From Macrostomum hystrix (lineage: Eukaryota; Animalia; Platyhelminthes): DNA of 64,000 bases. How positions within the stretch are numbered: position 1 is the stretch's first letter; the number at the start of each line of letters is the position of its first letter. The stretch spans positions 5,146,001 through 5,210,000 of the forward strand of contig CATNEN010000025.1 of assembly GCA_950097015.1 (NCBI GenBank). Reading direction: 5' to 3'. Made by a program: the position numbers and the translations under genes. Below the pieces are notes generated by a model, which was not told where the DNA came from, ran no database searches, and worked only from the letters and a program-made list of their open reading frames with translations. Positions 10,861-56,800 of this stretch are shown here, piece by piece.

Positions 10861-11973
10861 CATCTCTAAAAATCGTTCATATATCGACTTTCTAGAGATG
10901 TGGCGAGTAGATTCTTGTTGCAGAAGGTGCGCACAACAAAAATTTTGCCCAGCACTAGAATCTCATGTGCCTTCGTTGCTCCGTTCAGGTGGAACAAAGT
11001 GTAGGGGAAATCCAGCCAGCTACAGTCTTTCGAAAGCCTTGTTTGGGACCATTGTTTGATTAGAACGAGCGTCTTGTCCTTTACATTCGCGAAATAACTC
11101 TGACAGGTTCTCCGGCAAGCCTATGTTGACCAGCCTCACCAACTCTCTGCCATACGAGTTTCCTGACGTGTACATCTGCCCGAAGCATCCAATCTCCATG
11201 AGCAAGGTCTACAAGCCATTCAACGAAGAGGACATTCCGAAACTGCGCGGACTGAAGAAGGAGTGCAATACCACCTGTCAGGCGCAGCTGAGCTACTTCT
11301 TGGCCTCCGCAACCGCCTTCAGCAATCCGATGTATGTATTCAGGAGTACAGTTTCAGCAGTGGAGACCGCCCTAATGAAAAGCCTCAACGACAAAAGCAC
11401 AGGTCGGCTTTATAAAGAACCCGTTTGATCACCTATGAAAAAAGAAAATGAGTAAAATTTATTTTTATTTAAGCGATAATGTACGAGTATAAGGGTGTAT
11501 TCAGTAGAGTTATCTGTTGATGTACAGCCAGTGGCACAGGCGCAGCCGCTATGGGGGTACATCTCCGTCCATGGGCCAGAACACCCACGAATTTCTTTGC
11601 GTTTCAGGACATGTGAATCAGTGCCGTTTCACCGTGGAAGGAGCCGAGTACGTTGGCAATAAGAGCACAGTGCCCGTGTTCAGCAACTCGTTGCTCATCT
11701 CTCTCGCGCCCGCCAATCTGTCTCAGCGGCCATACGTGAGTGAAGTCGCTTGCCTGCCGTGGAATGAGGCGGCCAGGAGGCTGAGAACGGCCGGAGTCGG
11801 AGCCATGGCGGACAGGATTCTTGCGCTGAACTTCTCCGAAGGAGACGCCAGGTGTCGGGCTCCAGCTGGTCTGTCGCTGACAGATTTCAAGAACTACACC
11901 TGTGAGCTGACACAGATATTTTGTGCCACTCGAATCCCTATTTTAGAACAAATTATCTTGTTTACAGCTGCAG

Positions 11974-12184
11974 TGGTTGTAGCCGGGTGGTTAGGGCGAC
12001 GGACTCGCGACTTGAAGATCGGGGTTCGATTTCCAGTGGAGCAATATGTGTACTTTAGCAAGAGCACAAAACTCTGAAATGCTTCAGTTCACCCAGCATT
12101 AGCTGGGGTAATTGAGGGTGGGTGTGGCGTTCCCCTGTCAATGGACTGAACAGCCGTACGCCGTACTGTCGGCAGCACATCTAG
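11974..12184 (+). mobile_element. SINE family A copy
   Basis: A box GTAGCCGGGTGGTTAG, B box GGTTCGATTTCC, body with internal deletion. Confidence 0.8.
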
Positions 12185-12991
12185 CACAATCGGTTCAACC
12201 AATTATTGATAGCAAATATCAAATTTATAATACCCAATCTTTAAGACATATTTGAAACCGCAAAACCAAATTTTAGCTCAGCTAATCAATGCGGAAAAAT
12301 CACCAGCTTGCTATCTAGACAGCGCTTCTAATAGGATGTTTAACTTTTCCTGCTTTGGTGGTCAGACTTCCAGCATGAACGTCCAGGTGTGCACGGAGTG
12401 CTGCTACAAGAATAATTACAGGTACTATGGCATGCAGTACTACGACTGTTTCTGCAGCAACAGCACTGATTCGGGGCGTGTGGTGGCGTCCAGCAATTGC
12501 GTCTACTCTTGCCCTGGCCAGGGTGACGAAAAACAAAACTGCGGCGGCGATGGCCTGTTCATGAGCGTGAAGCAAATCAGAAGCGCTGGTGAGTTCTCGA
12601 ATAAGCCGTCCAGCTTCTGATGGTGACTCACCATCAGACTGGCTCACCATGACTCACCATGGTGACTCACCTTCTGATAGTCGTCTTGATTTTCCTTTGT
12701 GTAATACCAAAGATAGCATTGCGAATTTAGCTACTTACCGTATCAAAAAATTTCCTTTGTACTTCCAAGGTAAGGTTATTTTTAGTCTTCGGAGTCCTTT
12801 TTAAAACAGTCCAAGCAAATATCTCATTTCATTCTCATTTCAGACAACTTCCCTATATTTCAACCCTATGGAAGTTTCCTTAGCAACTACCAGCTTGGCC
12901 CATATTGCTTCTATGACGATGCAGCGAATGGACTCGCGATTTCCTACTGCAACACTCCGTTCTGCTGTGAGCACTGTGTATCTATCTATCC

Positions 12992-13040
<49 letters not shown>

Positions 13041-27041: not shown

Positions 27042-30000
27042 ATGACGGACAGCGAGAAGCAAAGCACTGATCAAAGCTCATCGGATGAACCGGAGGGCCA
27101 GTCTGGTGGCTTTGGCATTGCGAATTCATTCCGCGAGTTCGCACAGTACACCACCGCGCACGGACTGGGTCGCTTTGCCGCCCAGACCACTGTTTCTGGG
27201 CGCGCGATCTGGTCCGTATTTCTTCTTGCCACCTACAGCGGATTCGCCTATCATCTGTTCACTTTGGTTGACAGGCAAGAAATAGCTGGAAACACAATTG
27301 GCACAGCTCTGGAACCTGTGATTCAAGGGATGCGATTCGGATCGATATAATCTCATTAATTAGGAGACTGTCCCATATGTATCTCCCACCTCGCAGGTTC
27401 ACGAGCACACCCCTGCTGACTAGCCTGGCCACATCTCTGCCGTACGAGTTCCCGGACGTGTACATCTGTCCCCAGAACCCCGTCTCAATGAGCAAGGCCT
27501 ACGAGCCGTTCAAAAAGGATGTGGTGTCCAAACTGCGCGGACTGAAGAAAGACTGCAACACCTCCTGCCAGGCGCAGCTGAGCTACTTCTTGGAATCCAA
27601 AACGCCCCTCAGCACACCGATGTATGTATTCAGAGACACTGTTTCGGCTGTCGAGTCTGCCATTATGGAAATTTATAACGACAAGAGAACGGGTATGTTA
27701 TTGTTGTGAATTGATTTGGTAATATAAGTTATAACTAGGGTATTTTAAGAGTCCACCAGTTCAGGAGAGCCTCTCAATTAAACTTTATTTTCAGCTGGAA
27801 ACACGAGTCAGTGCCGCTTCACCAAAGACGGAACTGAGTATACTGGAAACAAGAACACAGTGCCGATTTTCGGAAATAGCATGCTCATCGTCCAAGCACC
27901 GGCCAATCTCTCGCAGCCGCCCCTCGTGACGGAGCTGTCTTGCATTCCATGGAATGAGGCAGCTAGGCAACTCAGGGACGCTGGATTGGGACACATGGCG
28001 GACAGGATTATGGCGCTGAATCTTTTAGATGGTGACGCCAGGTGTCGCGCTCCCGCTGGCCTACCTTTACAAGCTTTCGATAACTATACAAGTGAGCGCA
28101 CTGGGGTTTGTTTTGCTCGAATATCTGCTCAATCTGTAGAAACTCGGTAGATTTAGTCTGGAGCTAGCCCGTTTAATTTGACAGCGATGAACTATATCAC
28201 GAATAAACCTGAATCAATGAGTTTTAATGGAACCGGCAGTTTTGCTTATGAATTTCAGCACAAATGTACCGCCAGAGTAAAGTACCGATCTGCTACAATG
28301 ACAGTCCAAATAAGCTCTTCAGCTTCAACTGTTTTGGCAGTCAGATTCCAGTGATGAACGATGAACTGTGCACCGAGTGCTGCTTCAAAAACAACTACAA
28401 GTACTACGGCATGCAGTACTACGACTGCTTCTGCAGCAACACCATCGATTCTAGCCAGGAGGTGGAGGAATCAGGAAACTGCGTTTATTCTTGTCCCGGC
28501 CAGGGAACCAAAGAACAGACCTGTGGTGGCGAGGACACCTTCATGAGTGTAAAACAGATCAGAGATACAGGTAAGTGCCAATCTGAGCTAAATAAAAGGG
28601 TCCAGAACTTTAAGAAAACAATGGTGCTCTGTAGCGTCCCTGTTTATGCATCAACTGCCGCTAAAAAGCATGTTGTTCTAAGCGTTGACGCAGTGACGCG
28701 TCATAACGGGCAATCCAACAGTTTAACAGTACTAAAAGCTTTTTCTCGCCCCTTTTGCTGTTCAAGAGTTCGCAAAAATATTTTTTTAAGTTTCTATTTT
28801 CACTTGGTACTCGTAGAAGAAATGTTTATCGTTAAGCAATAAACTAACCTTAAGTTAGTTTATGTTAAGAAATAAATAATTCCTTAAGATTAAGGAATTG
28901 CTTAAACATTGCTTAAACATAGGATGTTCCTGAAGCAGAAACTGGTTTGAACGATCATTAACACTGATAAAGTAAACGCAGATTAAAATAAATTAGGAAA
29001 TTTTTGTCTAGCTTGTTTCAACTGAAAGATTTCAAACACGGAAAAATCTTGCTTTTTTCAGTCGACTTGCCAATATTTAAACCACACGGAAGCTTCTTAA
29101 GTGACTACCTGCAAGGCCCATACTGTTTCTACATGGACCCGGTGAATAACCTGTCAATGTCCTACTGCAACATCCCCTTTTGCTGTGAGTTTTTAGTGAA
29201 GTGTCTAGCTCATTGAAATTCTTCCGTAAACCTAAACATACGTCTAATTTTTCTTCAATGCCTCATAATTCCCAGCTGCGGCCGGGACCTACGACTGCGT
29301 CGTCAGCAGCAGTAAGAGCGCCGAGCTGGCCAAAGAGCAGTCTGCTAAGTATACAGGCAGTCTGAATTACACAGTGTCTGGTCGAGAATGCCTGGTATGG
29401 TCAAATGTGAAGTCTGCCGTATCTAAAAAACAGCTAAGTCTGTCCAGCTCGGACATAATCACTTGGAGCTTCGCTTACCAATGTGAGTCTTAACAACTGT
29501 GAAAAAAACTGAATGAAGTCTTTGATAAAAAAGAATACTAGTAACTGATCACACCCTCCCGAATTCGGCCAGCAAATACCATCAGAGCAGCAGCAATTGC
29601 ACGGTTCACTGTAAGGCTGCGTACGGCTGCTCAGTCCGTGGACTCGGGGATGCCAAACCCTCCCTCAATTACCCCATCTAATGTAGGTACCCATTTAACT
29701 GCTGGGTTAACTGAAGCAATGCAGAATTATTAAGTGCCCTGCTAAAGGACACAAATTTTTCCACTGGAGTCAGGAATTGAACCCCCGACCTTCAAGTCGT
29801 GAGGCCAACGATCTGACCACTAGGCTACAAACCTCATCTCTACAATCCCCATTGAATGCAACTTCAAAATTTTGTTATCAACAGCGCGCTTTCGAAACGC
29901 AATTATAAGACAATATTGTGACTATTGGTGTGAGGATACTGACTATTGGTGTGAGGATACTGTTACTATTGGTGTGAGGATACTGACTATTGGTGTGAGG

Positions 30001-33000
30001 ATACTGTTACTATTGGTGTGAGGATACTGTGACTATTGGTGTGAGGAAACTGTTACTATTGGTGTGAGGATACTGACTATTGGTGTGAGGATACTGACTA
30101 TTGGTGTGAGGATACTGACTATTGGTGTGAGGATACTGACTATTGGTGTGAGGATACTGTGACTATTGGTGTGAGGAAACTGTTACTATTGGTGTGAGGA
30201 TACTGACTATTGGTGTGAGGATACTGACTATTGGTGTGAGGATACTGACTATTGGTGTGAGGATACTGACTATTGGTGTGAGGATACTGACTATTGGTGT
30301 GAGGATACTGTGACTATTGGTGTGAGGAAACTGTTACTATTGGTGTGAGGATACTGACTATTGGTGTGAGGATATTGTGACTATTGGTGTGAGGATACTG
30401 ACTATTGGTGTGAGGATACTGACTATTGGTGTGAGGATAGTTGATCTCAATTGCAACACGTAATTCAACTTACTTTCTATTGCTTTCCCATACAACACAG
30501 ACTACTCGATCGATCGATTGATAATTGAGACAGCGGACAATGATTTCAGCAACAGTACGAATTACTGCAGAGCGGCTCGTGTTTACTACGATGCAACTTA
30601 CTACAGTGCGACAGACGTGCTGCCTGTTGGCTCCAGGCGAGAAAGACTCTTATAATTCTCTATCTCTTGAAAATACGAATACTATCAATATATTATCTAA
30701 TTGAAAATGCTGAATTTCAGCCGCAGCACACTAGTTTCGTCCATCCAACCTGGATGCTTTTACTTGAATGAGGAGGAGAATGAAGTTGTATTCGAGCAAT
30801 GCGAAATTCAGTCGTGCGGTAAGACATCATCAGGCTTGCAGTGTCGTTTTCAGTTTCTATTGAATGACGCTTCGTAGAAGTCAAAGTGAAGGATTGGTTA
30901 TTACAAGTATTTTGGAGCCTAATTAAACGACTTGAAGGTCGGGGGTTCGATTCCCGACTCCACTGAAACAATCTGTGTCCTTTAGCAAGACACTTAACTC
31001 TGCATTGCTTCAGTTCACCCAGCTGTTAAATGGGTACCAGCATTAGCTGGGATAATTGAAGGTGGGTGTGGCGTCCCCCAGTCCATGGATTGAACACCTA
31101 GCTGTACGCAGTCTTCAGATGCGCCGCGCAATAGCTGCGGCTGTGCTGTCGACTGCACATCTGGTCTGATTGGGACAGGTGTAATCAATTATTATTATTA
31201 CTAATTATAGTTATTATTGGAGCAAGCTCTATTAGGCACTTCGTGATGTGTTCTGTCACATACTCATTGCCACACCACATCACAGTGGACGCCAGTCCAA
31301 GCATCCCCGGAATCATAAGGAACAACATTGGTACTACACAGCTAGCTCGACAGTTCGGACCGAGTCTTGGGATCAGCTTGGTCGACTGCACATTTTACAA
31401 CTGGCAGTGCTATGCCAGCAACTTCCAGGAAGTTCTGCACCCAGAGAGTGGCGTCTGCTACCGCTTCATCAAGGAGCCTTTCATTAAAGGTCTGAGCCTT
31501 TCTCAGCTGACGGAGGCGACTCTGGAGGTTCAGCTTTTCACTGATTCTACTGATTCTGTCGGCTCCGGGCCAGAACAGACATACAGCTCATCTAAAGCAA
31601 TAATAAACGAGATCGATGATTTACAAGTTATCAGCAATGGTGTATTCGATGTAAGTCCTAGAACTCTATAAATATGTTGGGAAGGATGTTTGAGAGAAAA
31701 ATGAGTGTACATTTGTACACAAAAATAGTGTAAAATCGAATCAATCGAATCACAGGTGATAATCGTACCGAACGGAACTTTTCCGTGGTTGTCGAAGGCC
31801 CTCAGGGTCGCTAAAGCTCAAAATTCTGAGTTCAAGGTGCGACTGGACAAAACAGTTCGGTTCTCAAAGCCTCCGCCTCAAGACTGCAAGAAGAATTTAG
31901 CACCAGTCACGTACATGATTGACTATTGGAAGCCTGGAAGTCTACCTGCGAATCTTACGTAAGTCGGTTGATTGGCTGTTCGATAGGGTTTGAGGATTGA
32001 AATGACAGTGCGAAGTGCTGTGACAAGCCACAGCGCAGAAAAACTCGACATTCGAAACTCGAAAACTTCCAGATCTCTAATGGAGACCACATTCTCGGTA
32101 GTGGACTCTGAGAAAAACTGGACAAGAAGGATCGAATTGTTAAAACAGCTAATCACAGGATACAATGGAATGAAGTAAGCCTTTTCGACCCCCGTCTCCT
32201 TGGGTTGTTTCCTTGGGTAATATTCCGATACTCCTAAAGGCTAAAACTCCTGACTTTCAGAAGTCCCACCAGGAGAAAGCTGACTTTCCAGACGGGCACC
32301 CAGGAAGACTGTATCAACGAGTTCGTGCTGCGCAGATTCGCCCAGACCTGCCGCTGCCTGCCGACGTTTCTGCCCATTCCCGAGGAGCTGTTCATGGCTT
32401 ATCCCATCTGCTTCAACTCCACCGACATCAAAAACTTGTACACCACTGATCAGTGCTACATCAAGCAGCTGAGGCTGATGAACAATTATCGCGTTGACGC
32501 CCGAGATGTCTGTCCAGCCTCCTGCGAGACTAGAAAGTACACAGTCACACAGACTTCGGCACCCTGGCCCAATGTTCGAAGGCAGGTGTCCCGGACGTTC
32601 TTGTCAACTTTGGCAAAGACTTATGGCTATCCGAACAATGTAAAAACGCTTAGAGGCCCCGGAGCAATTTACTCTGCCTATCTTCAATATTTGAGCTTGC
32701 GAGGAAATATAACGGACTTGATGAACTTCGAGTACCAGCTGCTCACCCTGCAAGATCAGCTAGCCATGCTGTCTGTTTCAGCTGCTCAGATGTTCGGCGA
32801 AGAAGTGATTGAGGAAGAGGCCTACCCAATAAAAAACCTCATGGCCGACATGGGCGGTGAGTGCTTAATTGTGGGCCGCGTCCCACTACGAGTGATTAAA
32901 GACAATTTTATTTTCAGTACACTCGTACAAACGTGAGTTTACGAGCTCCTATTAGGATCTACTGCTTCAACTATCAGCTTTTTAAGCTAGCTGGACAAGT

Positions 33001-33399
33001 TGTATAAGTTTGTATTTCTGATTAATAATTTCGAATTACAAAATACTTTTTCTACTCTAAAATGCAGGCATTCTCGGACTCTGGTCGGGCGTCTCTGTAC
33101 TGACCGTGTGCGAGTTGATTGAGCTATCAGTCTACGTCGTCCTAACTGTGAAGCAGCTTATCACAAAGGGACCGCACAATCGTCCAGCTGGTGAAAGAGA
33201 CCCCAGCGCTGCCTACGTCATGCCAGAGCTGCCGTTAACACCTTCCAAGGAGGCTGAATGCGCTAGCAGCTGCAGCAACGGTGCCTTCGCAGTAGATGAT
33301 GCCGGAGGTAACAGCGGGGAAGTCAGCAAGAGGGGTGACAGCGTCAAAGGAGGCAAGAATGATGGCCACGATGGGCCAGTTGAAAGTAGCAGCTTCTGA
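27042..33399 (+). CDS. DEG/ENaC channel locus C, apparently intact, ~1099 aa, kringle[WSC]-kringle ectodomain
   Basis: Manual exons: 27042-27274, 27397-27692, 27795-28091, 28259-28570, 29062-29184, 29276-29482, 30501-30636, 30721-30818, 31286-31650, 31756-31958, 32073-32174, 32261-32856, 33068-33399. These sum to 3300 nt in frame. Motifs: YTTAHG, FPDVYICP, LVDCTF..CY...HPESGVCYRF, DCINE..CRC, CPASC, LMADMGGILGLWSGVS. Two donors are GC. Confidence 0.88.
29590..29832 (-). mobile_element. SINE family A copy
   Basis: Reverse-strand A/B boxes and CORE-like segment. Confidence 0.8.
29917..30439. repeat. Minisatellite, 21/24-bp units (CTATTGGTGTGAGGATACTGA)
   Basis: Over 20 head-to-tail copies with no unique spacers. 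Confidence 0.95.
30928..31218 (+). mobile_element. SINE family A copy
   Basis: B box, GTGTCCTTTAGCAAGACACTTAAC...CCAGCTGTTAAATGGGTACC, (ATT)n tail. Confidence 0.85.
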
Positions 33400-34814: not shown

Positions 34815-35058
<244 letters not shown>

Positions 35059-36602: not shown

Positions 36603-37679
36603 TCATTCCTATACTCAGGCATGAAATTAGCTTCTTAATACGCAGAAATGCAAAGCAAAAAGAGATCGATAAGACTGATAATATGGCCTCTAGCAGTGAA
36701 GAATCCGGATGTGGCGAATGCAAGGAATCAGTTACAAGCCGCCGTGAAGCAGCTGGAATTTCAAATCACCTGATTGCATTCTGCCAATACACAACTGCGC
36801 ATGGCTTAGGCAGGCTCGCAGCTCAGGCCGGGACGCTCGGCTGCAGCATCTGGCTCGTCTTCTTGCTGGCTACCTACGGTGGATTCGCGTTTCATCTCTA
36901 CACGCTTGTTGGCAGGTGTGAATCTAGCGTACATCATTCAAGTAATAATGAATACATATATGAGCTACCAGAAACGGGTTCTATTGTGGATAGCATTAGC
37001 GAGGCAACTTGTGCAAATAGAGTTTTCAAGGTTCTAATTGATCTCATTGGTGCGTTTCTAACCTAATCAGCAAGTCAGAATTGTCAACTCTTTGATAGCT
37101 CTCCGCCACTGAACCCCTTAGCTGGCAACCAGTGTCGTCTGTTCTGCGCGGTGATAAATCTTTGAAACGGAATGCATTGTTTACTGTAAAATCTTAAAAA
37201 CTGCAACTAGAAGCACTACTCCATCTGATTTTCATGAACTTAAGGTTCACGAGCACACCTCTGCTGACTAGCCTGGCCACATCTCTGCCATTCGAATTCC
37301 CGGACGTGTACATCTGTCCCCGGAACCCTATCTCGATGAGCAAGGCCTACGAGCCGTTCAAAAAGGATGTGGTGTCCAAACTGCGCGGACTGAAGAAAGG
37401 CTGCAACACCTCCTGCCAGGTGCAGCTGAGCTACTTCTTGGAATCCAAAGCGCCCCTCAGCACACCGATGTATGTATTCAGCGACACTGTTTCGGCTGTG
37501 GAGTCAGCTCTAAAAAGAAACTATAAAAATATTAGCACATGTGAGTAATAGCCTCACGTTTAGATCTATAGAGCCGAAAATTCTGTTTTAGCCATGGCAT
37601 GGCCTCAGTATTAGGTGTGAGTGGCTGAGAGAAAGTCTTGTGCTTCTTTGAGGAATCTGTAGTGCTGTGAGCTTTCCTG

Positions 37680-37890
37680 ACCTGCAGCCAACGGGGAGGC
37701 AATTCTACCCATTCCGCTGACTCGTGAGCACACACAAGGGCCGGTGTACATCTGCCTGATTTTCTCATCGTAAGGCAGTGTAAACTCACTGTGTCTTCGA
37801 AGTTAATCCAAAAGAAAGTAAACTGCGGGACAAGCTCCACAAGCCTACGGAATCGAGCTCAGGTACCTTGCTGCGAGATGCAAGTGCGTT
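37680..37890 (-). mobile_element. SINE family B copy
   Basis: Reverse complement of head and 3' stem-loop with compensatory changes. Confidence 0.75.
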
Positions 37891-39371
37891 AGACCACTCT
37901 GCAACTGATCCCAAAGCTTTTTAATACCAGCAGTATATTGAGGGTCTCTCCGCCCGAATATCGACGAAGAATTGCACCCTGTTTGTGCGCTCTCAGTTCT
38001 AGTAGAATTACAAATGCCTTCTGAGTGTCAACGGGTTTTAGATCAATTTTTTCGTTCCAAAAAAACGTTTTCTTCACCGTGATGCGGTTAACTGAACTCC
38101 CGATTGCAACAACAAAAGCGGTCCACAATCCGAGTACGACGGAGTGTCGCTTTACATAGGAGGGAACTGAGTATGTTGGGAATAAGAGCTCTGTGCCCGT
38201 CTTCGGTGACAGCCTTCGCTTGTCTCTGTCGCCTGACAATATGTCGCAGCCGCCCTACGTGACGGAGCTGCCATGCCTGCCATGGAACGAGGCCGCCAGA
38301 CAGCTACGAGAGGTCGGAATCGGGCACATGGCAGACCGGATACTGTCGCTAAACTTCTCCGACAGTGAAGCTAGGTGTCGATCTCCTGTTGAACTACCAC
38401 TCAAAGCTTTCGATGGCTATTTGAGTTAGTAAAAAGCCTTTATTTGAACGCATCAGGAGTTTTCACAATTTAGCTTAAAAGTGGCGTAACTTTTACCCGA
38501 TGCGGGTGACAGAATAGACAAGCAGCGGAGCTTTACCACCCACAGGAATTCAAGACTGGGACGCAAATGAAAATATGTCAATTTAAATAATACGATCACA
38601 CAAAAATAACGCATGGGTTTGGCTCTTTAAGGATAATAGACAATCATCTCATTGTATTGGATAAAATTTTTGACTATTCGGTAATACAAACCCATTTAGC
38701 AAGCTGCTCAACAGTTCATCGATCTACAAGTGTAAATATATCAATTTATCGAAAATCTCGCATATTGTACCTATTTGCAGCGCAACCGATAAATGTAGAT
38801 AAAATGTCCTTCTGCTACTACGAGTAAGACAATGCATCCAGCAGGCTGTTCAGCTTCAACTGTTTTGACGTCGAAATTCCGACAATGAACGTCGATCTGT
38901 GCACTGAATGCTGTTACAAGAGGAGCTACAAATACTATGGTTTACAGTCGTTCACTTGCTTCTGCAGCAACAGCATCAATCTGAGTCAGATGGTGGACTC
39001 TGAAAACTGCATCTATTTGTGTCCTGGCGTGGAAGATAAAGATGATAGCTGCGGAGGGGACGACCTTTACCTCAGTGTGAAGCAGATAAGAGACACTGGT
39101 AATTAAAAAAGTTCCAATCTCTTCATCCACACAAGCGCAACAAAATCCGCTGTGTTGCTTGAATCGAGTAGCACTGAATGAGTATTTAATATATTTTTTG
39201 GCATATCTACAAAAAATTGCAGGGTAAACAGAAGCTGGCATGCATTGTTTAAGCAAATCTCTTAAACACCCCACACGATATCCCTCGCTTGAAAAGTGTC
39301 GTCAATTGTTTTGTATCGAAGAGCTCTTGACCATCAAAGACATTTTCCAGTGTGATAGTAATAAAAATCAT

Positions 39372-39662
39372 TTCAGGAAGGCAAGCGAGGAGGCGGTTTC
39401 GCCCATTCGCAATTCCTGAATACACACATATATACTGTCCGCAGGCACACGCTCGCACAGGTGTGTACATATGCCCTGAATTTCGAATTGTCATGCAGTG
39501 TACACTCTCACTGTGCCTTGGAGGTCGGCCCTCAATGGCGTAAATTGCACGACAAGCCCCCAAGCCTTCTCTGCAGCTGCGACCCAAATTATGTGGCCTC
39601 GCCTCGGAATCGAGCTCAAGTACCTTGGTGCGAGAGGCAAACGCGTTAACCGCTCTGCTACT
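39372..39662 (-). mobile_element. SINE family B copy (near full length)
   Basis: Minus strand: GTAGCAGAGCGGTTAACGCG (A box), GAGCTCGATTCC (B box), body, stem-loop. Confidence 0.82.
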
Positions 39663-42603
39663 CGCCCCCTAATCACCTGTGATTGTCCGATTGAGTTTGA
39701 TTGATTTTACTTTCTAACTTTTTTTCCGAATTGTTTGCCTTATTTCAGTCGACTCGCCGATCTTCGCACCATACAGAGGCTTCTTAGCAAACTACCTACT
39801 TGGGCCATACTGTTTCTTCACAGATCCTGTAAGGGGATTGGCGATGGTCTACTGCAATATCCTATTTTGCTGTGAGTAATGAGTTAATTACTACATATTC
39901 TAGGTACTCATATTTTAATTTGTTATTAAAAAGTTTTTTATAGCTACTTAAAGTTTGGTTTTAATGTTGGTATAGGGTATTACACAAGTTTTTCATTCAC
40001 GAATTCAAAATAAATTGTGGAAGCTGGAAATGCGTACAATATTGTAAGAACTGACTGCCTACCCTTAAATCAGCATGTCGCTAACATTCTTGATGTGAAA
40101 TTTTTCAAATGTCTGCTTTTTGTTCAACAAACTGTGCAGCTTCAGCAAGCAGCTATGACTGCTTAGTCAGCAACGACAGAAGTGTAAGCCTCACAAACGA
40201 ACAGTCGGCAAAGTACACGGGCAGCTTGAATTACACAGTTTCTGGTCGAGAATGCTTGGTTTGGGCGGAGGTGAAAGCTGCGGTAGAGAGAAGACAACTC
40301 AGCATGCCCAGCTCCGATTTGATCTCATGGAATTTCTCCTACCAGCGTAAGTTTTACTTTTCGATTGCCTGCCTTTGTGAGATACGATCTTGTTTGCAAA
40401 CGCAAAAAAGCTGAAAAGCGCCTATGCATCAAACAAACGCAGAACCTCCAGATTCAGTCGATCAGTTGATAATTCAGACTGCTGATTATGCGTTCAGCAA
40501 TGGCACTAACCACTGCAGAGCAGCGAATGTTCTATATGAGGCCACCGACTTCAATGGAAGTAACAAAGCTGTTGTCGGCTCCAGGTACAAAGATATTGCA
40601 GCTAACTTATTGATTCCTTTTGTCTTTAAAAATACGAGCTAACGAGACAAAAGTATTTTGTTGCAAACAAGGTGCCACAGTCGGTCAAATGTTACCTTTC
40701 AGCCGGGGCACACTGGTTTCCTCTATTGTCCCAGGATGTTTCTACTTGAACGAGGAGGAAAACGAGACCATATTTGAGCACTGCGCGGTTGATTCGTGTG
40801 GTATGGAAGTTCTGAAATTTTTTGTGCTCTGAACAACTAAGAGCAGTAAACCGTGCTGTGCATTTGGGGCTATGTTTAAATTAATGTGTCTCCTAAATTA
40901 GAAAAAAAGGCAAAAAGTAGTAAAAATCATATTTCACGTGTCATACTTCTTCATAGTGACAGTAGAATAAAACTTTTCTACCAAACCACCTCGACAGTGG
41001 ACGCCAGCCCCAGCGTTCCTGGAATAATCAGAAACATAATTGGCTCGACTCACTTGGCTCGACAATACGGCCCCAGTCTCAGCGTGGGGCTCGTTGATTG
41101 CAAATTTCATCACTGGCAGTGTCACGCCAGCAGCTTCCTGGAGTTTCTGCACCCAGAGAGTGGCGTTTGCTACCGCTTCATCAAGGAGCCCTTCATTGAA
41201 GGCTTGAGTCTCTCTCAGCTGTCGGAGGCAACTCTGTAGGTTCAGCTTTTCACCGACTCAACCGACTCAGTTGGCTCCGGTCCCGATCAATTTTCTAGTT
41301 CGGCAAAAGCTATAAAAAATGAGCTTGGCGACTCAAATACCGTCCGCAACGGTGCATATGCTGTGAGAGTGATAAAGTTCCCAGCCGTAGTGAGAATTTT
41401 GAAATAAAACTACGTAAAACTAATTAGTAATCCACCAATTCACAGGTGATTATCGCACTGAGTAGAAATTTTCCGTGGCTGAAGGAAACTTTTATTTTGC
41501 AGTTTCTAAAGGTCAGAAGTCTGAGTTCAAGGTGAGACTTGACAAATCACTTAGATTTTCAAGGCCAGCACCACGTAACTGCAGAAATACTGTAGCACCA
41601 GTCACGTACATGATTGACTATTGGAAACCTGGAAGTTTACCTGCAAATATTACGTGAGTTCTCCAGATTAATTGTCTTTTAAGGGGGGCAGAGCAGCAAA
41701 ATTACAAAAAATGCTGTATTTTAGAGCCCTAATGGAGACCACGTTTTGGTTTGTGTACAACGAGAAAAACTGGACGAGAAAGATCGAATTGCTGAATGAG
41801 CTTATTAAAGGATACAACGGAGTGAAGTAAGTTTCTTTAATCCACATCCTTTGTGCTATTTGAGCACACAGTGTCAATCACTTTCTGACTTTCAGAAGTC
41901 CCACCAGGAGAAAGCTGACTTTCCAGACGGGCACCCAGGAAGACTGTATCAACGAGTTCGTGCTGCGCAAATTCGCCCAGACCTGCCGCTGCCTGCCGAC
42001 GTTTCTGCCCATTCCCGAGGAGCTGTTCATGGCTTATCCCATCTGCTTCAACTCCACCGACATCAAAAACTTGTACACCACTGATCAGTGCTACATCAAG
42101 CAGCTGAGGCTGCTGAACAATTATCGCGTTGACGCCCGAGACGTCTGTCCAGCCTCCTGCGAGACTAGAAAGTACACAGTCACACAGACTTCGGCACCCT
42201 GGCCCAATGTTCGAAGGCAGGTGTCCCGGACGTTCTTGTCAACTTTGGCAAAGACTTATGGCTATCCGAACAATGTAAAAACGCTCAGAGGTCCCGGAGC
42301 AATTTACTCTGCCTATCTTCAATATTTGAGCTTGCGAGGAAATTCGAATGAGCTGATGAACTTCGACTACCAGCTGCTCACCCTGCAAGATCAGTTAGCC
42401 ATGCTGTCCGTTTCAGCTGCTCCGATGTTCGGCGAAGAAGCGATTGAAGAAGAGGCCTACTCTGTCAAGAATCTTCTGGCAGACATGAGTGGTGAGTTTT
42501 TTGTTCAGAATATATATTTTTTGCAAGGCTTACTATTGCTGTAAATTTTGTCATCTAATGCAGATTCGAACAAAAATTATTGACCTACAAGTCATCTCTT
42601 AGC

Positions 42604-42826
42604 AGCATCCTGCTCCGCTCAGCCACCCTGCTCCGCTCAGCCACCCTGCTCCGCTCAGCCGCCCTGCTCCGCTCAGCCACCCTGCTCCGCTCAGCCACCC
42701 TGCTCCGCTCAGCCATCCTGCTCCGCTCCGCCACCCTGCTCCGCTCAGCCGCCCTGCTCCGCTCAGCCACCCTGCTCCGCTCAGCCGCCCTGCTCCGCTC
42801 AGCCACCCTGCTCCGCTCCGCAACCC
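42604..42826. repeat. 18-bp minisatellite (CCCTGCTCCGCTCAGCCA) in the last intron of locus D
   Basis: About 12 tandem copies. Confidence 0.95.
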
Positions 42827-45800
42827 ATCTCAATTCCGCCACATCTCTCGAATTCACATTAATGCTACACAGAAACTGTTTCATTAAAATGTGGCAGGAA
42901 TCCTGGGCCTCTGGTGCGGTGTCTCTATCTTGACAGTATGTGAACTGATGGAGCTGCTATTCTGCCTGTTCCTTTCCGCAAGGCAACTTGCCAGTCAGTG
43001 GCGGCGTTCAAAGAGCAGTGCCATTGAAGGCACTAGCGACGTTGGTTTGAAACTTGGTGGAGCATCTGTGTCAGTTAGCTAGACCTTCATTGACAATGTT
43101 GTTGATCCGCTCCGTGGCAGCTGCGTGTGATTGCTACAATTGCAACGCATATATTTATTATTCGATCAGACGATGCAACATCAAGAATACTCATAATCGC
43201 GCAAGTAAAGTTAAGTGCGCAAAACACAACATTTTTTGTTGAGTCAACTTATTGAGTAAAAAACAATTCGAGTCTAGCGCAAATTTATGAAAATAATCCA
43301 TTAATTCTTGACTCACATCTCGAAAGCAAGCGGCGATAACCCTGTTTCTAAACCTTTCCGACGCAGTCAGACCTATCTTTATAGTGTTTTTATTTCAAAT
43401 GTAATTTTATATTAACTGTAATATCTGAGAGCAACGTACGATTGTCTGCATTATACAATACATTTAAACTGTCGATGTACTGAGGTACTAAAAACACGCT
43501 ATAATTGATGCCTTTGTTACTTCTTAAAAATATATAAGTGAAAGCAACTGTGACCTGCTTTTCTATGCTCTGTCTGCATATTGAGCAGTAGTTTTCTCTG
43601 CGCTGTCTCTCATTTTATATATAATAGCGTTCACTTTGAGATCATTTCCAACCATTCTCTTCCGAAGCTAATAATAAAAGAGTGACTGGTTCATTTGAAG
43701 GATAACTAATATCTTGAAGTTAAAATCATATTTGTATCTAAGAAAGCTTATCTGGAACATTATATTATCCTTGTGAATTTTATACTTCCCAATGGAAGCA
43801 AGGAGTTAGATGGTACTGGTTTGCCGGTGGTACATATTCTAAGCGATACTGTGATCTGGGTTGCTAGCATACGGTCATATTTCATATCAAGTTAAAAAGC
43901 TGAGAAGCGGAGAGGCTTAAAATGATAAAAAATGTATCCGAGAAGTATTTCTCTCCAGCTCACTAACCTCTGGCCTTGTTTGACCGTTTGCGGATAAATA
44001 TCAACAGGGACAGAGGTAGATAAAGTAAAAAACACACGGCTTGGCAACCTGCTCATTCCTCACCAGCTGGTTTAGGTGGGCAAATTTTTGAATACTTAAT
44101 TGAGGGCCAGCTCAAAAAACTGCATCAATCCGGTGTTTTCTACTTTTTGAACTGGCACCGCTAGTATCATCCGCGCTTATGGCGGGGATGTCTATTAAAC
44201 GATTCCCGCCATATTCCCACTAAACCTGAGAGAATACCAAATAGACTCTCACAGAGGTGGCGCACAGTCGTGGAAGCGGCAGATAAGAAGCAGAATTTTT
44301 TTTCAACAGGTGAGCCAAGAGAATACGAATTTGCGGTCTTAGACTCTCAAATACGAAGATTCATCAGACGATTTATGAAATACTATTTTTGACAATTTGG
44401 AAGCTCCATCAAAATCTTATTGCCAGTAAAAAATGTCGCCGAATATATATTGCCCTTGTTAGGAAAAATATCTGATTGAAATGGTATCGAATTATTTTTA
44501 AGGACTTTTATTGTAGAGAATTAAACTTTTATGGCAAGTTGATTTCTATGGTCTCCTAAACTAGAGGCATAGAGGTATTAGAGTACTGGTATTATGAGAG
44601 AAGCCCAATAAAAATCAAAGCGAAAGTTGATAGAAGCAGTTTTGAATAAGCTTCGATAGCTCTTCAGTGAAGATGATATTGGTCGACTAGAATTACATGG
44701 AATCGTGGGATCCGACCACTAGTCCTTGTATGCAGCGCACCTCTCAATCTTCCAGACGATGACAGCCGCCAACTCGCGGGCTGCCCCCGAGGAAAATGCA
44801 GTTACGGGCGCCTCGAAAGAAGCCAACGGCTTTGGCATAACGCGCTCGCTAAACGAGTTTTGCGAGTACACCACCGCACATGGACTGGGCCGCTTCGCCG
44901 CTCAGAGCTTAGTGTTCGGTCGGACAATCTGGACGGCCTTCTTATTAGCCACATACGCCGGCTTCGCCTATCACCTTTACACATTAATTGACAGGTGCGC
45001 TTTCTAGAATATTATAGCTATAAATAGAAACTGCAAGAAACGTTTAATTTCCAAAACGAACTAGAATTAAGATTTACAAACTTGCTTTGACAAAAATTGC
45101 AGGTACACCAGCACGCCACTGTTGACCAGCTTGACCACGACGCTACCCTTCGAATTCCCGGATGTGTACATCTGCCCGACAAACCCGATCTCTATGAGCA
45201 AGGCCTATCAGCCATTCTCACTCGAGACAGACATGCCGAGACTGCGCGGATTGAAAAAGGACTGCAACATCACCTGTCAGGGGATGCTGAGCTTTTTTAT
45301 TGAATCTAAAACCAGCCTCAGCATGCCAATGAAAGTCTACTCAGACACGCTCTCCGCTGCGGAAGCCGCCCTGATGGCAACAATAAGTAGGAATCGCGCT
45401 TGTGAGTGAGATTAATACGAAATTTAGCCCGAATAGAACATTTAGTTGAATATGCTATGCGTTAATGCAGTAATAAATATATTACTGATTCTGGTTGGAG
45501 AGCTCGAGTTCAGAAGCAGAAAATTCTTATCCGACGCTTTCTGACTCGTTTTTGCTTGCGCAGACGCCCACGAAGCACATTTTCGAACTGGAAAATGTTT
45601 CCACTAATGATACTTTTTTTCTCTACAGCAGGTAACACAAGCCAGTGTCGCTTCAGCCTGGATGGCACTGAGTACACAGGTAACAAGAGTACAGTGCCGG
45701 TGTACGGTGTATCTCTGCAGCTGTTGGTGCCGCCGAGCAATCTGTCCCAGCCGCCCTTCGTGACGGAGCTGCCCTGCCTAGCTTGGAATGAGGCGGCTGA

Positions 45801-47181
45801 CAAGCTGAAAAAAGCCGGCGCACGAAAGATGGCGCAGAGAATTCTGGCGCTCAACTTTTCTGATGGCGACAACAGGTGTCGTTCCCCTCAGAACCTGCCG
45901 CTTGATGCTTTCGCGAACATTTCAAGTGAGCATTGTGCTGAATCAAATAATCTAAATGCATACAGTAAACGGTATTTGAAAATTTTATTTTGAACTTTCG
46001 ATATAGAGTGCGCACTGGAAGTTAGAAGAAGTTAAAAAAAACTTTATGTTTGACATGACAAAAGAGGCGGCAGAAATCGGTAAAAAACGCTCGGATGAGT
46101 GTACACTCGTTTGACTGATAATATCCTTTCAATTGTGCAGCTTTCTTGATCGATACTAACGAACGTCCAATCTGCTACGAAGACGATAGCGGGCAGTTTC
46201 TCAATAACTGCTTCGGCACTCCCATCGCCGGACTAACTATTGAAATCTGCGCCGAGTGCTGCTATAAGAAGAACTACAAGTACATTGGCGTGCAGTACTA
46301 CGATTGTTACTGCAGTAACAACGTCTCAGACACGAAAGAAGTATATGAATACTACTGCGAATATTCGTGTCCAGGTAATGCCGAGACACTTTGCGGCGGC
46401 AATGGAAACTTTAAAAGTGTTCTGCAGATCAGGGATTCAGGTACGAGCAAAAAGTTAATTAAAAGTTCTGTTCATCTTCGAATATGATAAATACCACTTT
46501 TGCATCCGTACGCTCGTAATCGTATACTTATTTAATAGCAATTTATCGTCATTTTGTACTAATAACCACATTCAGTTAGTTATTAGCCCGAATTAATTAT
46601 TTAATTAATCTGGCACAAAATTTATTTCCTGAATGATCCACAGTTGGATTGCCGATATTTCTGCCGTTCGGAGGTTTCTTAACAAATTACCTGCATGGGC
46701 CGTACTGCTTCTACATGGATCCAGACAACGGTTTGGCCATGTCCTACATACCATACCATTCTGCTGTGAGTAAATTTATACACATACAGCCTACTTATTA
46801 AGGAGTAAGCTGGGCATCATCATGTGGGCGTTACTGAACATTCTTCCAGCGTCATCCAGCAAATATGACTGCGTCACTGAAAGTGAAGCCTACGGTGGCA
46901 GGCAAACTGCAATGTACACTGGCGAGCTGAATTTCACCGCTTCCGGTAGAGACTGCATGGCCTGGTCAGATGTTCAGGAGGCTGTCCTAAAGCACGAGCT
47001 TAGCCTGTCCAGGTCTGACATGGCCACGTGGAGCTTCCCGTTCGATGGTTAGTTGGGCTTTTCAATTTTTTCGAAACTGTAGTGGCTCGACAGTAGTTTT
47101 AGTAATTCTAATCTTTGTTAATCTTAATAGTCAAATATTTTTATTATATATAACTGCCGAGGACAAGGGCAGTAGCCTATG

Positions 47182-53805: not shown

Positions 53806-56800
53806 ATGGAGACAAATGACGAAATGTACAATGAGCCGATGCAAAATCCTACACCTAGCGGCGACGGTGACCGTAGCGGCGTTGGAAAGGCTGGGGAGTT
53901 CAGCCTCTCGGGCTCCTTCTGGGACTTCTGCGGCTATACTACTGCGCACGGCTTGGGCAGACTCGAGGCCCAGAGCAGGGCTTTTGGTCGCACCGTCTGG
54001 ATAGCATTTCTTCTGGTGACTTACGGCGGATTCAGCTATCACCTTTATACCTTAATTGATAGGTAAGTTTCTCGAATATTAAATTTGAAGAATCCATTTC
54101 TTGACTTACTTGACTTAGCTGCAGGGTTGTCTTGGACACAGCGGGGAGGCGAGGATCGCCCATACCGACCTTGGGTCTTAGAGGGCGACAGAAGGCAGCG
54201 CCAGATCCGCAGTCCACCTGCATACCCTGTTAAGGTCAAATGGTGTCACCTTTCCCCCCAGCCGTAGCCAGAGGTACCTGATCACGCGCAGGTGCACGAC
54301 GCTCCGGACTGGCCGCATGCCCTGTTGAGGTCGAAGGGTGACACCTTTCCCTCAGAGCCGTAGCCAGAGGTACCTGATCACGCACAGGAGCACGAAAGAA
54401 TCCATTTGAGTTTAATATATCATCCTCATTGCAAGGTTACTACTGCTTCTGCTTCTGCTTCTGAAAAGTTTGCAGAATATAACAAACACTCAACAGTTTC
54501 TAAGAATTGCTAAGTATTGCCTAACAGCATTCTGCCCATCAAATTTCAAGTAGCCCGAAAGGATACAGTGATTTTCCACGCTAAATCTCACAAATACGAG
54601 CTAGCCAACGAAAGTCATTCACGATTTTAAAAGGGTGAATGAATATGACTGTCATGTCAAAGATTTCAGTTTAGGACTTTAACTCTTAGACAAAGCCTCC
54701 ATTTTCTAGCTCTTTCCCGCTATTACGAGTATGTCCCATAGTCTGTCACACAGAAACCATATCACTTTTGAGGAAATAGAAATATACTCATTTTCTCACG
54801 CACTAGAACCAATAAAATTTACTGATCGCGTTGCCGCCATTTTCGAACTCAGGTACACGAGCACACCTCTGCTGACGAGTCTGACAACCACTCTGCCCTA
54901 CGAGTTCCCCGATGTGTATATCTGTCCTGCCAATCTAATGTCGATGAGCAAACTTTACAACCGTTTCAACGCGACAACAGATAAGCCACGACTTCGTGGA
55001 TTAAAGAAGGACTGCAACCTGACCTGCCAGATCGCCCTAACTAAATTCGATATTAACAGACGCACCGATAATTTGGACTTTAGCACTCCTGCCTGGGCAC
55101 TTGAGGACGCCGTAAATGCAGCAGAGCAATCAATTATCGCTTGGTTTCAACGGAACACGTATGGTGCGCATCAGACTCGGGATTTTATAATTTTGTTTTA
55201 TAGGCCTTGAATAAACGTGTCTCTCTTGATTTGCGACAGAAGTATCCAGTAAAGAGTGCGAATCCGTACAGTCGTGATGTCATGATTTAATGACGCATTT
55301 TTTCACAGAAAAGCTTTATCACTTACGGTTAACGATCGCTTTCAAACATTTCTCAGGCCAGTTCAATACCTGCCGATTCACTCTGACTGGCAGAGAGTAC
55401 ACTGGCAACAAGAGCACTGTGCCAGTGTACACAGAGAGCGCACAGGTGCAGCTGCAAGCCAGCAACAGTGGCAGCAGCGTTCCTGCTGCGCAGCCGTACG
55501 CAAGGGAGGCGCCATGCATGGCGTGGAAACAAGCGGCCAGGCTGCTGATGGAGAAAGAGTTGACCTCACTGGCCAATCAGATTCTGAATTTGAACTTCTC
55601 TGAGGGGGACGCCAGGTGCCGCCAGACGGCTGGACTTGCGTTTCGGAAAATTCTAGAAAATAACGACGGTAATAGCTGAGCCATTGTACTTGCTTTTGCT
55701 TCATGTAATAATTCATTACACCTGCCCCAATCAGGCCAGATATGCTGCCGACAGCGCAGCCGCAGCTATTGCGCCGCGCATCTGAAGGCTGCGTACGGCT
55801 GTTCAGTCCATGGACTGGGGGGGGCGCCACACCCACACCACCCCAATTACCCCAATTGAGTCTGGTTCCCAATTAATGGCTGGGCGAACTGCAGTAATTT
55901 AGAGTAAACTTTTTTCTTCAAGGCCACAAATTGTTCTAGTGGAGTCGGGAATCGAACCCCCGACCTTCAAGTCGTGAGTCCGATGCTCTAAACACTAGGC
56001 TGCAACCCCACCCCCTAATGAAATCTTAGTGACTTAGTGACAAAAAACGGCTACTACTAGTTGGCTTCCAAACATTTTATTTGAATTTTCAATCATAGTT
56101 TTAGTATGTGCACCTGGTACAATTTTGGTAGGGACTTTCAGTGATTATCCAGGTTTTCTGCTTCCGTGGAAAATCAGAGCGGCCTAACTGCCTGTCACAT
56201 AGCTTTTAAGTGAATGGCCCTGATATTTACGTTCATCGTGAATGTAGTGTATTCAGGCAATTTTTCAATGATTTGCTCAATGAATCACATGTCCGCATTT
56301 AACAGTTAACACAGCTATTTGAAGACGGTTAAAGCAAGTCAAGCAAAGCTGAACAAATATTTCACTAGCCTTGCAAGAAAACTTAAACTTTCATACGACG
56401 ACTTCCTTTTTTCATGCCATTCTCCCGATGAGTGCGCAATACGGAGCGTTTAAAGCTCTTAGAATTACACAAGTGATTAGCAAAGTGATTTTTTAAGCTG
56501 CAGTTCAATCTTTAGGAACGTACTGACGAGCTATATAGAAAAAAACGGACAAAACAAAAAAATCACAATGATCCTACAATTTTACCCGCTCTTTGAAAAC
56601 TCGTCATGAAACAAACTCTTATGAAACATTTAGATCTCCAAGTTGTTGTTCCACTAAAGTCCGACATTGGCTGCTACTTTGAGAACCAGAGCGACAGTCA
56701 CTACTCATTCAAGTGCTTCGCTTTGACCGTGATGACCCTGACTGTTGACACGTGCGCTGAGTGCTGCTACAATCGCAACTTCACCCACATCGCCGTCAGG

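What the first reader, a model, noticed from the sequence alone, without database searches (positions are those of the whole stretch)
27795..29184. WSC domain nested inside a kringle rather than next to it, on a phase 1-1 exon
Seen: exon 3 supplies kringle Cys1-3 (QCRF..GTEYTG...SCIPW...ARCRAP, matching the NYCRNP position). Exon 5 supplies Cys4-6 (GPYCFY...SYCNIPFC). Exon 4 between them is a complete WSC domain with phase 1 introns on both sides, in A, C, D, E and F. The whole exon 3-8 cassette also starts and ends in phase 1. Established: class 1-1 modules are the hallmark of exon shuffling in extracellular proteins. Inference: WSC was shuffled into a kringle loop, making a discontinuous kringle that presents a lectin-like head. 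Skipping exon 4 would be frame-neutral and give a plain kringle.
Basis: partly seen in the sequence, partly recalled or inferred. Interest (0 to 1): 0.8.

Follow-up and report, generated by a model that had tools for sequence, protein, structure and literature searches.

The report
WSC domain nested inside a kringle
In a flatworm sodium-channel gene, one self-contained exon places a whole WSC (sugar-binding-type) domain inside a loop of a small disulfide-locked kringle domain, an uncommon, clean case of a domain inside a domain built by exon shuffling; its function is untested.

Summary
In copy C, exon 3 (27795-28091), exon 4 (28259-28570) and exon 5 (29062-29184) are all flanked by phase-1 introns. 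Exon 4 alone is a complete WSC domain (Pfam E 3e-11). Exon 3 carries three conserved Cys and exon 5 three more.

The same layout is found in copies A, E and F, and in decayed form in D. Macrostomum lignano genes only 30% identical also have it (exons of 303/300/123 and 297/312/123 nt).

The split-kringle reading is supported, but indirectly:
- The exon-5 profile hits only kringle C-termini in the PDB (best E 0.015).
- With the WSC removed, K1 aligns end to end with the neighbouring kringle K2 (hhalign E 4.7e-7).
- In an AlphaFold model of the M. lignano orthologue, 18 kringle entries in a row align to a range spanning both sides of the WSC (Z 4.5-6.3, 72-84 residues). The WSC part itself matches Kremen1 at Z 12.7.

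Pfam's Kringle model does not detect either half. I did not run the joined exon 3+5 sequence against it, because it has no reference. No RNA run was listed, so exon-4 skipping is frame-neutral but has no evidence.

Copies D and E are damaged. The scan had already noted this nesting on other DNA of this genome. I found no paper describing it.

The parts
27795..28091 (+). Exon 3 of copy C: N-terminal part of kringle-like module K1 (Cys1-Cys3). Phase 1-1, 297 nt.
   Evidence: Splice sites read. Three Cys are invariant in 4 window copies and in 9 M. lignano sequences. hhalign against K2 places Cys2-Cys3 in register, P 2.2e-4. There is no Pfam or PDB sequence hit on its own.
28259..28570 (+). Exon 4 of copy C: a complete WSC domain on one symmetrical phase 1-1 exon, 312 nt, with 10 Cys.
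   Evidence: Pfam PF01822 E 3e-11, HMM positions 4-82 of 82. The orthologous part of the model matches Kremen1 WSC at Z 12.7, rmsd 1.9, 91 residues aligned.
29062..29184 (+). Exon 5 of copy C: C-terminal part of K1 (GPYCFY...SYCNIPFC, Cys4-Cys6). Phase 1-1, 123 nt.
   Evidence: Profile A2 against the PDB gives 14 hits, all of them kringles, aligned to the last 22 residues of the domain; best E 0.015. It aligns to the Kremen1 kringle C-terminus.
29276..30818 (+). Exons 6-8 of copy C (29276-29482, 30501-30636, 30721-30818): the second, contiguous kringle-like module K2, with enlarged loops.
   Evidence: Pfam Kringle E 0.002, HMM positions 4-32. In the K2 profile search against the PDB, 58 of the 60 listed sequences (65 matched) are kringle-containing proteins (best E 0.0016), with three colinear pieces on tPA kringle 2. 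For the AF2 model, the top 20 structural hits are all kringles, Z 3.4-4.6. UniProt names the M. lignano fragment P0009 'Kringle domain-containing protein'.
27042..27692 (+). Exons 1-2 of copy C: DEG/ENaC N-terminus, TM1 and the start of the ectodomain. Exon 2 ends in phase 1.
   Evidence: Pfam ASC PF00858, HMM positions 1-46 and 46-86.
31286..33396 (+). Exons 9-13 of copy C: the rest of the DEG/ENaC ectodomain, TM2 and the tail.
   Evidence: Pfam ASC HMM positions 137-215, 289-436 (52.1 bits) and 436-455. Colinear with P0008 residues 16-1091.
11608..12966 (+). Copy A, exons 3-5 (11608-11901, 12277-12588, 12844-12966): intact, phase 1-1.
38128..39871 (+). Copy D, exons 3-5: same layout but decayed, with stops in exons 3 and 4 and the exon-3 donor lost.
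45629..46765 (+). Copy E, exons 3-5: exons 3 and 4 are intact and phase 1-1. Exon 5 is 122 nt (frameshift, Cys5 codon lost).
55357..57188 (+). Copy F, exons 3-5: the most divergent copy, with open reading frames and phase-1 sites available.

Best explanation
Exons 3-5 encode one composite extracellular module: a very divergent, enlarged kringle (K1) whose chain is interrupted between Cys3 and Cys4 by a complete WSC domain.

Exon 3 gives Cys1-3 and exon 5 gives Cys4-6. If the canonical kringle pairing holds (1-6, 2-4, 3-5), all three disulfides tie the exon-3 half to the exon-5 half. The WSC would then hang from a loop that is stapled at its base. In lysine-binding kringles, that same loop carries the anionic ligand-binding residues.

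The WSC lies on one symmetrical phase 1-1 exon. The simplest origin is therefore insertion of a WSC exon into a kringle of a K1-K2 pair. This happened early in the family, because paralogues at 30% identity share it.

The module, followed by a second kringle K2, sits in the variable outer (finger) part of a DEG/ENaC channel subunit, between ASC profile positions 86 and 137. A trimeric channel would therefore carry three such arms. By analogy with Kremen1, where kringle and WSC jointly bind DKK1, the arm most likely binds an external protein or glycan that tethers or tunes the channel.

Shown here: the exon structure, the WSC identity, the conservation, and the kringle-like C-terminal half. Predicted: that the two halves fold together. 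Inferred: the disulfide pairing, the origin and the function.
For: Exon structure and conservation:
- The exon boundaries and phases were read directly. They are reproduced in copies A, E and F and in M. lignano genes L002 (297/312/123 nt) and L001 (303/300/123 nt).
- Cys counts are odd in each half (3 + 3) and even in the WSC (10), and conserved in all 9 M. lignano sequences and the intact window copies.
- dN/dS is 0.09-0.28 for exons 3 and 5 where it can be computed.

WSC identity:
- Pfam E 3e-11.

Kringle identity of the halves:
- The exon-5 profile hits only kringle C-termini in the PDB.
- The contiguous K1 profile hits Kremen1 (E 9e-11) in three pieces. They appear in the order kringle Cys2 region, kringle C-terminus, WSC in Kremen1, but Cys2 region, WSC, C-terminus in the query.
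- With the exon-4 columns removed, K1 aligns with K2 from Cys1 to Cys6: hhalign global E 4.7e-7 over 117 columns, local E 1.3e-5. Each half alone aligns to the colinear part of K2. K2 is itself kringle by PDB profile and by fold.
- AF2 model of P0008:192-438 (pLDDT 71): ranks 1-4 are WSC domains, on model residues 96-214. Ranks 5-22 are all kringles, with model range about 1-247, 72-84 residues aligned out of roughly 80-residue domains, 16-29% identity, Z 4.5-6.3.

Position in the channel:
- Pfam ASC profile positions on the flanking exons.
Against: - Pfam's Kringle HMM finds nothing in exon 3, in exon 5, or in contiguous K1 from five proteins, even at E 10.
- The exon-3 profile finds no kringle in the PDB.
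- In 1.84 billion representatives it finds only six relatives, all of them M. lignano proteins.
- The model is of medium confidence, comes from a shallow alignment of 21 rows, and is of the orthologue (62% identical), not the window's own protein.
- A Z of about 6 is not significant on its own by the tool's note.
- The model has two confident helices between Cys2 and Cys3, which ordinary kringles lack.
- The exon-3 part has a 22-residue insert between Cys1 and Cys2.
- The intron in the same loop of K2 is phase 2 and lies some residues away, so a shared recipient intron is not visible.
Confidence: 0.75

Rival explanations
1. The layout arose by rearrangement, not by insertion. An ancestral Kremen-like array (kringle, WSC, kringle...) lost the C-terminal third of the first kringle and the N-terminal two thirds of the next. 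The surviving halves now complement each other around the WSC. The present-day structure would be the same; only the history differs.
For: The best solved relative of the K1/WSC block is Kremen1, where kringle and WSC are adjacent and tightly packed (PMC5014086). The cassette holds another kringle right after it. The K2 intron in the equivalent loop differs in phase and position from those flanking exon 4.
Against: It needs two precise deletions that keep the frame and the Cys parity. K1 without the WSC aligns colinearly with K2 over its full length, as expected for tandem duplicates of one whole kringle. The WSC is exactly one symmetrical 1-1 exon in all copies and in distant paralogues.
Confidence: 0.15
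2. Exons 3 and 5 are not halves of a kringle. Exon 3 is a lineage-specific Cys-containing, partly helical module, and exon 5 is a short kringle-like hairpin. The folding together seen in the model is AlphaFold pattern completion.
For: Exon 3 has no Pfam or PDB sequence hit. The model has confident helices at residues 53-73. Z is only 4.5-6.3 and pLDDT falls below 50 at residues 28-43 and 213-219.
Against: Three Cys in each half means each half on its own would have an unpaired Cys. Exon 3 aligns with K2 at Cys2 and Cys3 (C..W and CR.P/CRAA). Joined, the halves align from Cys1 to Cys6. Kremen1's C.(F)WNE piece matches exon 3 weakly. The 18 kringle entries cover whole target domains, and no other fold matches the non-WSC part.
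Confidence: 0.1
3. Exon 4 is a regulated cassette exon. The channel is made in two forms, with a WSC-bearing K1 or with a K2-like plain K1.
For: Exon 4 is a multiple of 3 in every copy (312, 312, 300, 303 nt) with phase 1-1. Skipping would leave a Cys3-Cys4 loop of about 38 residues, close to K2's 34.
Against: All eight M. lignano database proteins with both K1 halves include the WSC block (a degenerate one in P0002 and P0012). No RNA run could be listed. Every exon of the cassette except 7 and 8 is symmetrical, so symmetry alone predicts nothing.
Confidence: 0.1

Closest known systems
Kremen1/2 ectodomain (kringle-WSC-CUB; PDB 5FWS)
   Same: It combines one kringle with one WSC as a single rigid binding unit. 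It is the best solved sequence and fold relative of the K1/WSC block (E 9e-11; Z 12.7). It has the canonical three kringle disulfides and four WSC disulfides (PMC5014086).
   Different: In Kremen the kringle is finished before the WSC starts. Here the WSC lies between kringle Cys3 and Cys4. There is no CUB domain, and the carrier is a DEG/ENaC channel rather than a type I receptor. The kringle is about 140 residues instead of about 80.
Canonical kringles (plasminogen, apolipoprotein(a), tPA, prothrombin, HGF, ROR1/2)
   Same: Six Cys in the same order. The motifs Y.G, C..W, CR.P and GP[WY]C...YC.[IV]P.C are present. The predicted fold aligns 72-84 residues.
   Different: It scores below Pfam's cut-off. 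It has a 22-residue insert between Cys1 and Cys2 and predicted helices between Cys2 and Cys3. The loop that carries the anionic lysine-binding residues in plasminogen kringles (my own knowledge) is replaced by a 104-residue domain.
DEG/ENaC channels with added extracellular modules (for example nematode EGF + ASC proteins)
   Same: A channel of the same superfamily whose ectodomain has gained shuffled extracellular modules. An ESM Atlas cluster of nematode ASC+EGF proteins turned up in the shape search (row 8).
   Different: The modules differ (EGF rather than kringle/WSC). No nesting has been reported there, and I did not test any relationship.
Domain-insertion (nested) architectures in general
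   Same: One domain interrupts another's chain. A 2026 survey reports insertions in 20% of multidomain proteins (PMC13114784 abstract).
   Different: That paper's text mentions neither kringle nor WSC. Here the host is a very small disulfide-knotted module and the insert is one symmetrical exon.

Membership tests
WSC domain (PF01822) | Pfam model at or above the gathering score, over its full length | tested here: met
   Exon 4 alone scores 43.8 bits against a cut-off of 27.8, HMM positions 4-82 of 82. The orthologues score 30.7-45.6 bits.
WSC domain (PF01822) | WSC/PAN-like fold | tested here: met
   Model residues 106-214 match Kremen1 WSC at Z 12.7, rmsd 1.9, 91 residues aligned. Yeast Wsc1 gives Z 12.0. 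This is a predicted model of the orthologue.
Kringle (PF00051) | Pfam model at or above the gathering score (34.3 bits) | tested here: not met
   No hit for exon 3, for exon 5, or for contiguous K1 of five proteins at E up to 10. The joined exon 3+5 sequence was not run, because it has no reference.
Kringle (PF00051) | Six conserved Cys in kringle order, with the flanking motifs | tested here: met
   C-R..(G.EY.G), C..W, RCR.P, GPYCF, [YF]C, P.C are invariant or nearly so across 9 M. lignano sequences and the intact window copies.
Kringle (PF00051) | Disulfide pairing 1-6, 2-4, 3-5 | not testable with these tools
   The model coordinates are not exposed. Only Cys parity (3+3) argues for links between the halves.
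Kringle (PF00051) | Kringle fold | tested here: met
   Ranks 5-22 of the PDB-wide structural search are all kringles and span both sides of the WSC: 72-84 residues aligned, Z 4.5-6.3. This is a predicted, medium-confidence model.
Kringle (PF00051) | Short Cys3-Cys4 spacing (PROSITE-type signature [FY]-C-R-N-x(7,8)-[WY]-C, quoted from memory) | tested here: not met
   About 140 residues lie between RCRAP and GPYC in K1, and 34 in K2.
Kremen family | Contiguous kringle, then WSC, then CUB, on a single-pass receptor | tested here: not met
   The order differs. There is no CUB hit in the cassette. The carrier is an ASC channel.
DEG/ENaC (PF00858 ASC) | ASC model above its cut-off, with two transmembrane ends | tested here: met
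   Exon 12 scores 52.1 bits against a cut-off of 23.6. Exons 1, 2, 9 and 13 cover HMM positions 1-86, 137-215 and 436-455. The full-length orthologues score 84-131 bits.
Class 1-1 exon-shuffling module | A whole domain on an exon flanked by phase-1 introns | tested here: met
   Exon 4 is 312 nt and phase 1-1 in C and A, 300 nt in E and 303 nt in F. It is 312 and 300 nt in M. lignano L002 and L001.

The most novel reading that the evidence does not exclude
The kringle-with-nested-WSC is a new composite ligand-binding fold. It would act as the built-in sensor or matrix tether of a DEG/ENaC channel, so that binding of a glycan or protein to the arm gates or anchors the channel. That would be a gating input not known for this superfamily. 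It would also be a natural example showing that a roughly 80-residue disulfide knot tolerates a 100-residue domain in its ligand loop.
Probability: 0.2. Interest if true: 0.8.

Novelty: new variant of a known kind. Interest (0 to 1): 0.55.

Why it matters
Kringle and WSC are classic mobile modules that have so far been described side by side, as in Kremen. Here one sits inside the other, on a single symmetrical exon, and the arrangement is conserved across old paralogues.

This gives a concrete case for how exon shuffling can create discontinuous domains, not only strings of domains. It also shows that sequence models miss such a split domain: Pfam does not see this kringle, and databases label these proteins only as WSC-containing or hypothetical.

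The module decorates the ligand-sensing region of a DEG/ENaC channel family that has expanded in a regenerating flatworm model lineage. It is therefore a candidate handle for finding what opens these orphan channels.

Tried and rejected
- RNA evidence: the look-up of sequencing runs listed no run. Splice junctions and 3-5 skipping remain untested.
- Exon-3 profile against the PDB gave only a chance hit to a monooxygenase, E 0.19.
- Pfam on exon 3, on exon 5 and on contiguous K1 gave no Kringle hit.
- ESM Atlas search by features gave no usable hit. By shape it gave only WSC-bearing clusters with TM below 0.5, and no kringle+WSC cluster.
- Foldseek against the PDB saw the WSC and only 19-25-residue kringle pieces. 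The nested kringle appeared only with the aligner that tolerates long inserts.
- dS is saturated for exon 4, so no dN/dS could be computed for the WSC.
- The joined exon 3+5 protein was not sent to any search or folding tool. Exons were joined only inside local scripts, reading window.fa, for comparisons within the family.
- I considered that the cassette belongs to a separate gene. I rejected this because the phases fit on both sides and two independent M. lignano annotations carry ASC-cassette-ASC in one protein.
- Paper searches found nothing on a kringle interrupted by WSC, or on DEG/ENaC channels with kringles.
Full report
**What is there**

The window holds a tandem family of animal DEG/ENaC (amiloride-sensitive channel, Pfam ASC) genes on the + strand. 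There are full copies at about 3.7-21.6 kb (A), 27.0-33.4 kb (C), 36.7-43.1 kb (D), 44.8-51.0 kb (E) and 53.9-62.1 kb (F). A fragment, B, lies at 24.0-25.4 kb and holds only the 3' exons.

In copy C, exons 1-2 match ASC profile positions 1-86. Exons 9-13 match positions 137-455. Between them lie six extra exons, 3 to 8.

The only relatives of exon 3 among 1.84 billion representative proteins are six Macrostomum lignano proteins. These are 45-75% identical to the window's copies. The window therefore comes from a related flatworm or from unannotated paralogues.

**The observation**

- Exon 3 is 27795-28091 (297 nt).
- Exon 4 is 28259-28570 (312 nt).
- Exon 5 is 29062-29184 (123 nt).
- Each has an AG acceptor and a GT donor, and each starts and ends in phase 1.
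- The spliced translation of exons 3-8 is open, at 1173 nt or 391 codons. It is bounded by phase-1 introns at exon 2/3 and exon 8/9. Intron 7, inside the cassette, is phase 2.
- The exon model aligns without gaps across every junction to M. lignano annotated proteins.
- The M. lignano genes keep the same exons. L002 (P0008, 62% identical) has 297/312/123 nt and L001 (P0004, about 30% identical) has 303/300/123 nt, all phase 1-1.
- Copies A and F are open. Copy E has a 122-nt exon 5 (frameshift, Cys5 codon lost). Copy D has stops in exons 3 and 4 and has lost the exon-3 donor. 'In A, C, D, E and F' is therefore true of the layout, but not of intactness.

**Exon 4 is a WSC domain**

Exon 4 alone gives Pfam WSC at E 3e-11 over HMM positions 4-82 of 82. 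In the model of the orthologue, this part matches Kremen1's WSC at Z 12.7 (rmsd 1.9, 91 residues) and yeast Wsc1 at Z 12.0. It has 10 Cys, an even number.

**Are exons 3 and 5 the two parts of one kringle?**

Sequence models alone do not say so.
- Pfam's Kringle model finds nothing in exon 3, in exon 5, or in contiguous K1 of five proteins.
- An exon-3 profile finds no kringle in the PDB.

Five independent lines do say so.
1. An exon-5 profile hits 14 PDB sequences at E up to 10. All of them are kringles, and all but one truncated match align at the last 22 residues, Cys4 to Cys6 (best E 0.015).
2. A profile of the contiguous block hits Kremen1 (E 9e-11) in three pieces. In Kremen1 their order is kringle Cys2 region, kringle C-terminus, WSC. 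In the query it is Cys2 region, WSC, C-terminus.
3. The neighbouring module K2 (exons 6-8) is a contiguous kringle with enlarged loops. In the PDB profile search, 58 of the 60 listed sequences (65 matched) are kringle-containing proteins, with three colinear pieces on tPA kringle 2. The top 20 structural hits are all kringles. UniProt names the M. lignano fragment a kringle protein. K1 with the exon-4 columns removed aligns with K2 from Cys1 to Cys6 (hhalign global E 4.7e-7 over 117 columns; local E 1.3e-5). Each half alone aligns to the colinear part of K2.
4. Exon 3 and exon 5 each carry exactly three conserved Cys. Neither half can satisfy its Cys alone.
5. An AlphaFold2 model of P0008:192-438 was built from 21 rows (pLDDT 71) and searched against 48,161 PDB representatives. 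It gives four WSC entries and then 18 kringle entries in a row: ROR2, angiostatin, plasminogen, factor XII, HGF, urokinase, apolipoprotein(a), prothrombin and others. Their aligned model range runs from residues 1-9 to 242-247, that is, across the WSC. They align 72-84 residues of roughly 80-residue domains, at 16-29% identity and Z 4.5-6.3. The split K1 matches kringles at least as well as the unsplit K2 does (Z up to 4.6).

Caveats:
- A Z near 6 is not decisive on its own.
- The model is of the orthologue, from a shallow alignment.
- It shows two confident helices between Cys2 and Cys3 that ordinary kringles lack.
- I could not read Cys-Cys distances, because coordinates are not exposed.

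**Steps not run**

Exons were joined only inside local scripts for comparisons within the family. No sequencing run could be listed, so there is no RNA evidence for or against a 3-5 junction.

**How it most likely works**

K1 is a kringle scaffold whose Cys3-Cys4 loop carries a whole WSC domain. With canonical pairing, all three disulfides would bridge the exon-3 and exon-5 halves and clamp the base of the insert (inference). In lysine-binding kringles that loop holds the anionic ligand residues (my own knowledge). The WSC therefore sits where a kringle normally meets its ligand.

In Kremen1, kringle and WSC form one rigid surface that binds DKK1 (PMC5014086). A joint protein- or glycan-binding face is thus the best guess here.

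The arm lies in the variable outer region of the channel subunit, so it probably tethers or tunes the channel. This is untested.

Purifying selection acts on exons 3 and 5 (dN/dS 0.09-0.28, with dS saturated).

**Origin**

One symmetrical exon carrying a whole domain, inside a module that has an uninterrupted sister (K2) next door, fits insertion of a WSC exon by exon shuffling. It predates the split of paralogues that are now 30% identical.

A rearrangement of a Kremen-like kringle-WSC-kringle array cannot be excluded. The intron in K2's equivalent loop differs in phase and position, so no shared recipient intron is visible.

**Novelty**

Kringle next to WSC is known from Kremen, and nested domains are common in general (PMC13114784). 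I found no paper on a kringle interrupted by a WSC or on DEG/ENaC channels with kringles. Databases call these proteins hypothetical or 'WSC domain-containing'.

Within this scan, the same channel family, and in one note the nesting itself, had already been recorded on other DNA of this genome (s1-306108, s1-310526, s1-316719). I did not rely on those notes.

**Verdict**

This is a new variant of a known kind, of moderate interest.

Noticed in passing
window 36683-43079 (copy D): The cassette of copy D is decayed. It has in-frame stops in exon 3 (CRFT*EG) and exon 4 (YYE*DN), and the exon-3 donor GT is changed to TT near 38421. Exon 12 is still 93% identical to copy C at the protein level, so the decay or a gene conversion may be recent.
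   Followed up: partly
window 46644-46765 (copy E exon 5): Exon 5 is 122 nt instead of 123. The Cys5 codon is gone and the frame at the donor is shifted. This is either a pseudogene or an assembly error.
   Followed up: partly
window 24003-25362 (copy B): A truncated duplicate holding only exon 9, exon 10 and parts of exons 12/13 of the channel gene. It has no cassette and no 5' exons.
   Followed up: no
window 30637 (intron 7 of copy C): The only in-phase donor is a GC (CAG|GCGAGA). The M. lignano orthologue has AG|GTAAGC at the same place (L002, about 8599). It is phase 2 in both, and the protein junction VGS-S-RSTL is conserved.
   Followed up: partly
window 29919-30439 and 34816-35058: A 21-nt minisatellite (TGACTATTGGTGTGAGGATAC, 24 copies) lies in intron 6 of copy C. 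A (TATC)n run of 61 units lies downstream of the gene, and a similar run follows exon 5 of copy A (about 12973-13087).
   Followed up: no
window 30926-31200; also 47213-47483, 51651-51913, 60386-60675: A dispersed repeat of about 270 nt (up to 94% identical by tblastx) sits in introns of copies C, E and F. It is probably a SINE-like element.
   Followed up: no
P0012 / P0002 (M. lignano paralogues), residues about 290-385: In this subfamily the nested WSC has lost several Cys and no longer hits Pfam WSC, while all six K1 Cys are kept. The host kringle seems more constrained than its insert.
   Followed up: no
ESM Atlas search, row 8: A cluster of nematode ASC+EGF proteins (906 aa, 92 members) matches the WSC part of the model by shape (TM 0.34). 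Other DEG/ENaC lineages may carry PAN/WSC-like modules too.
   Followed up: no
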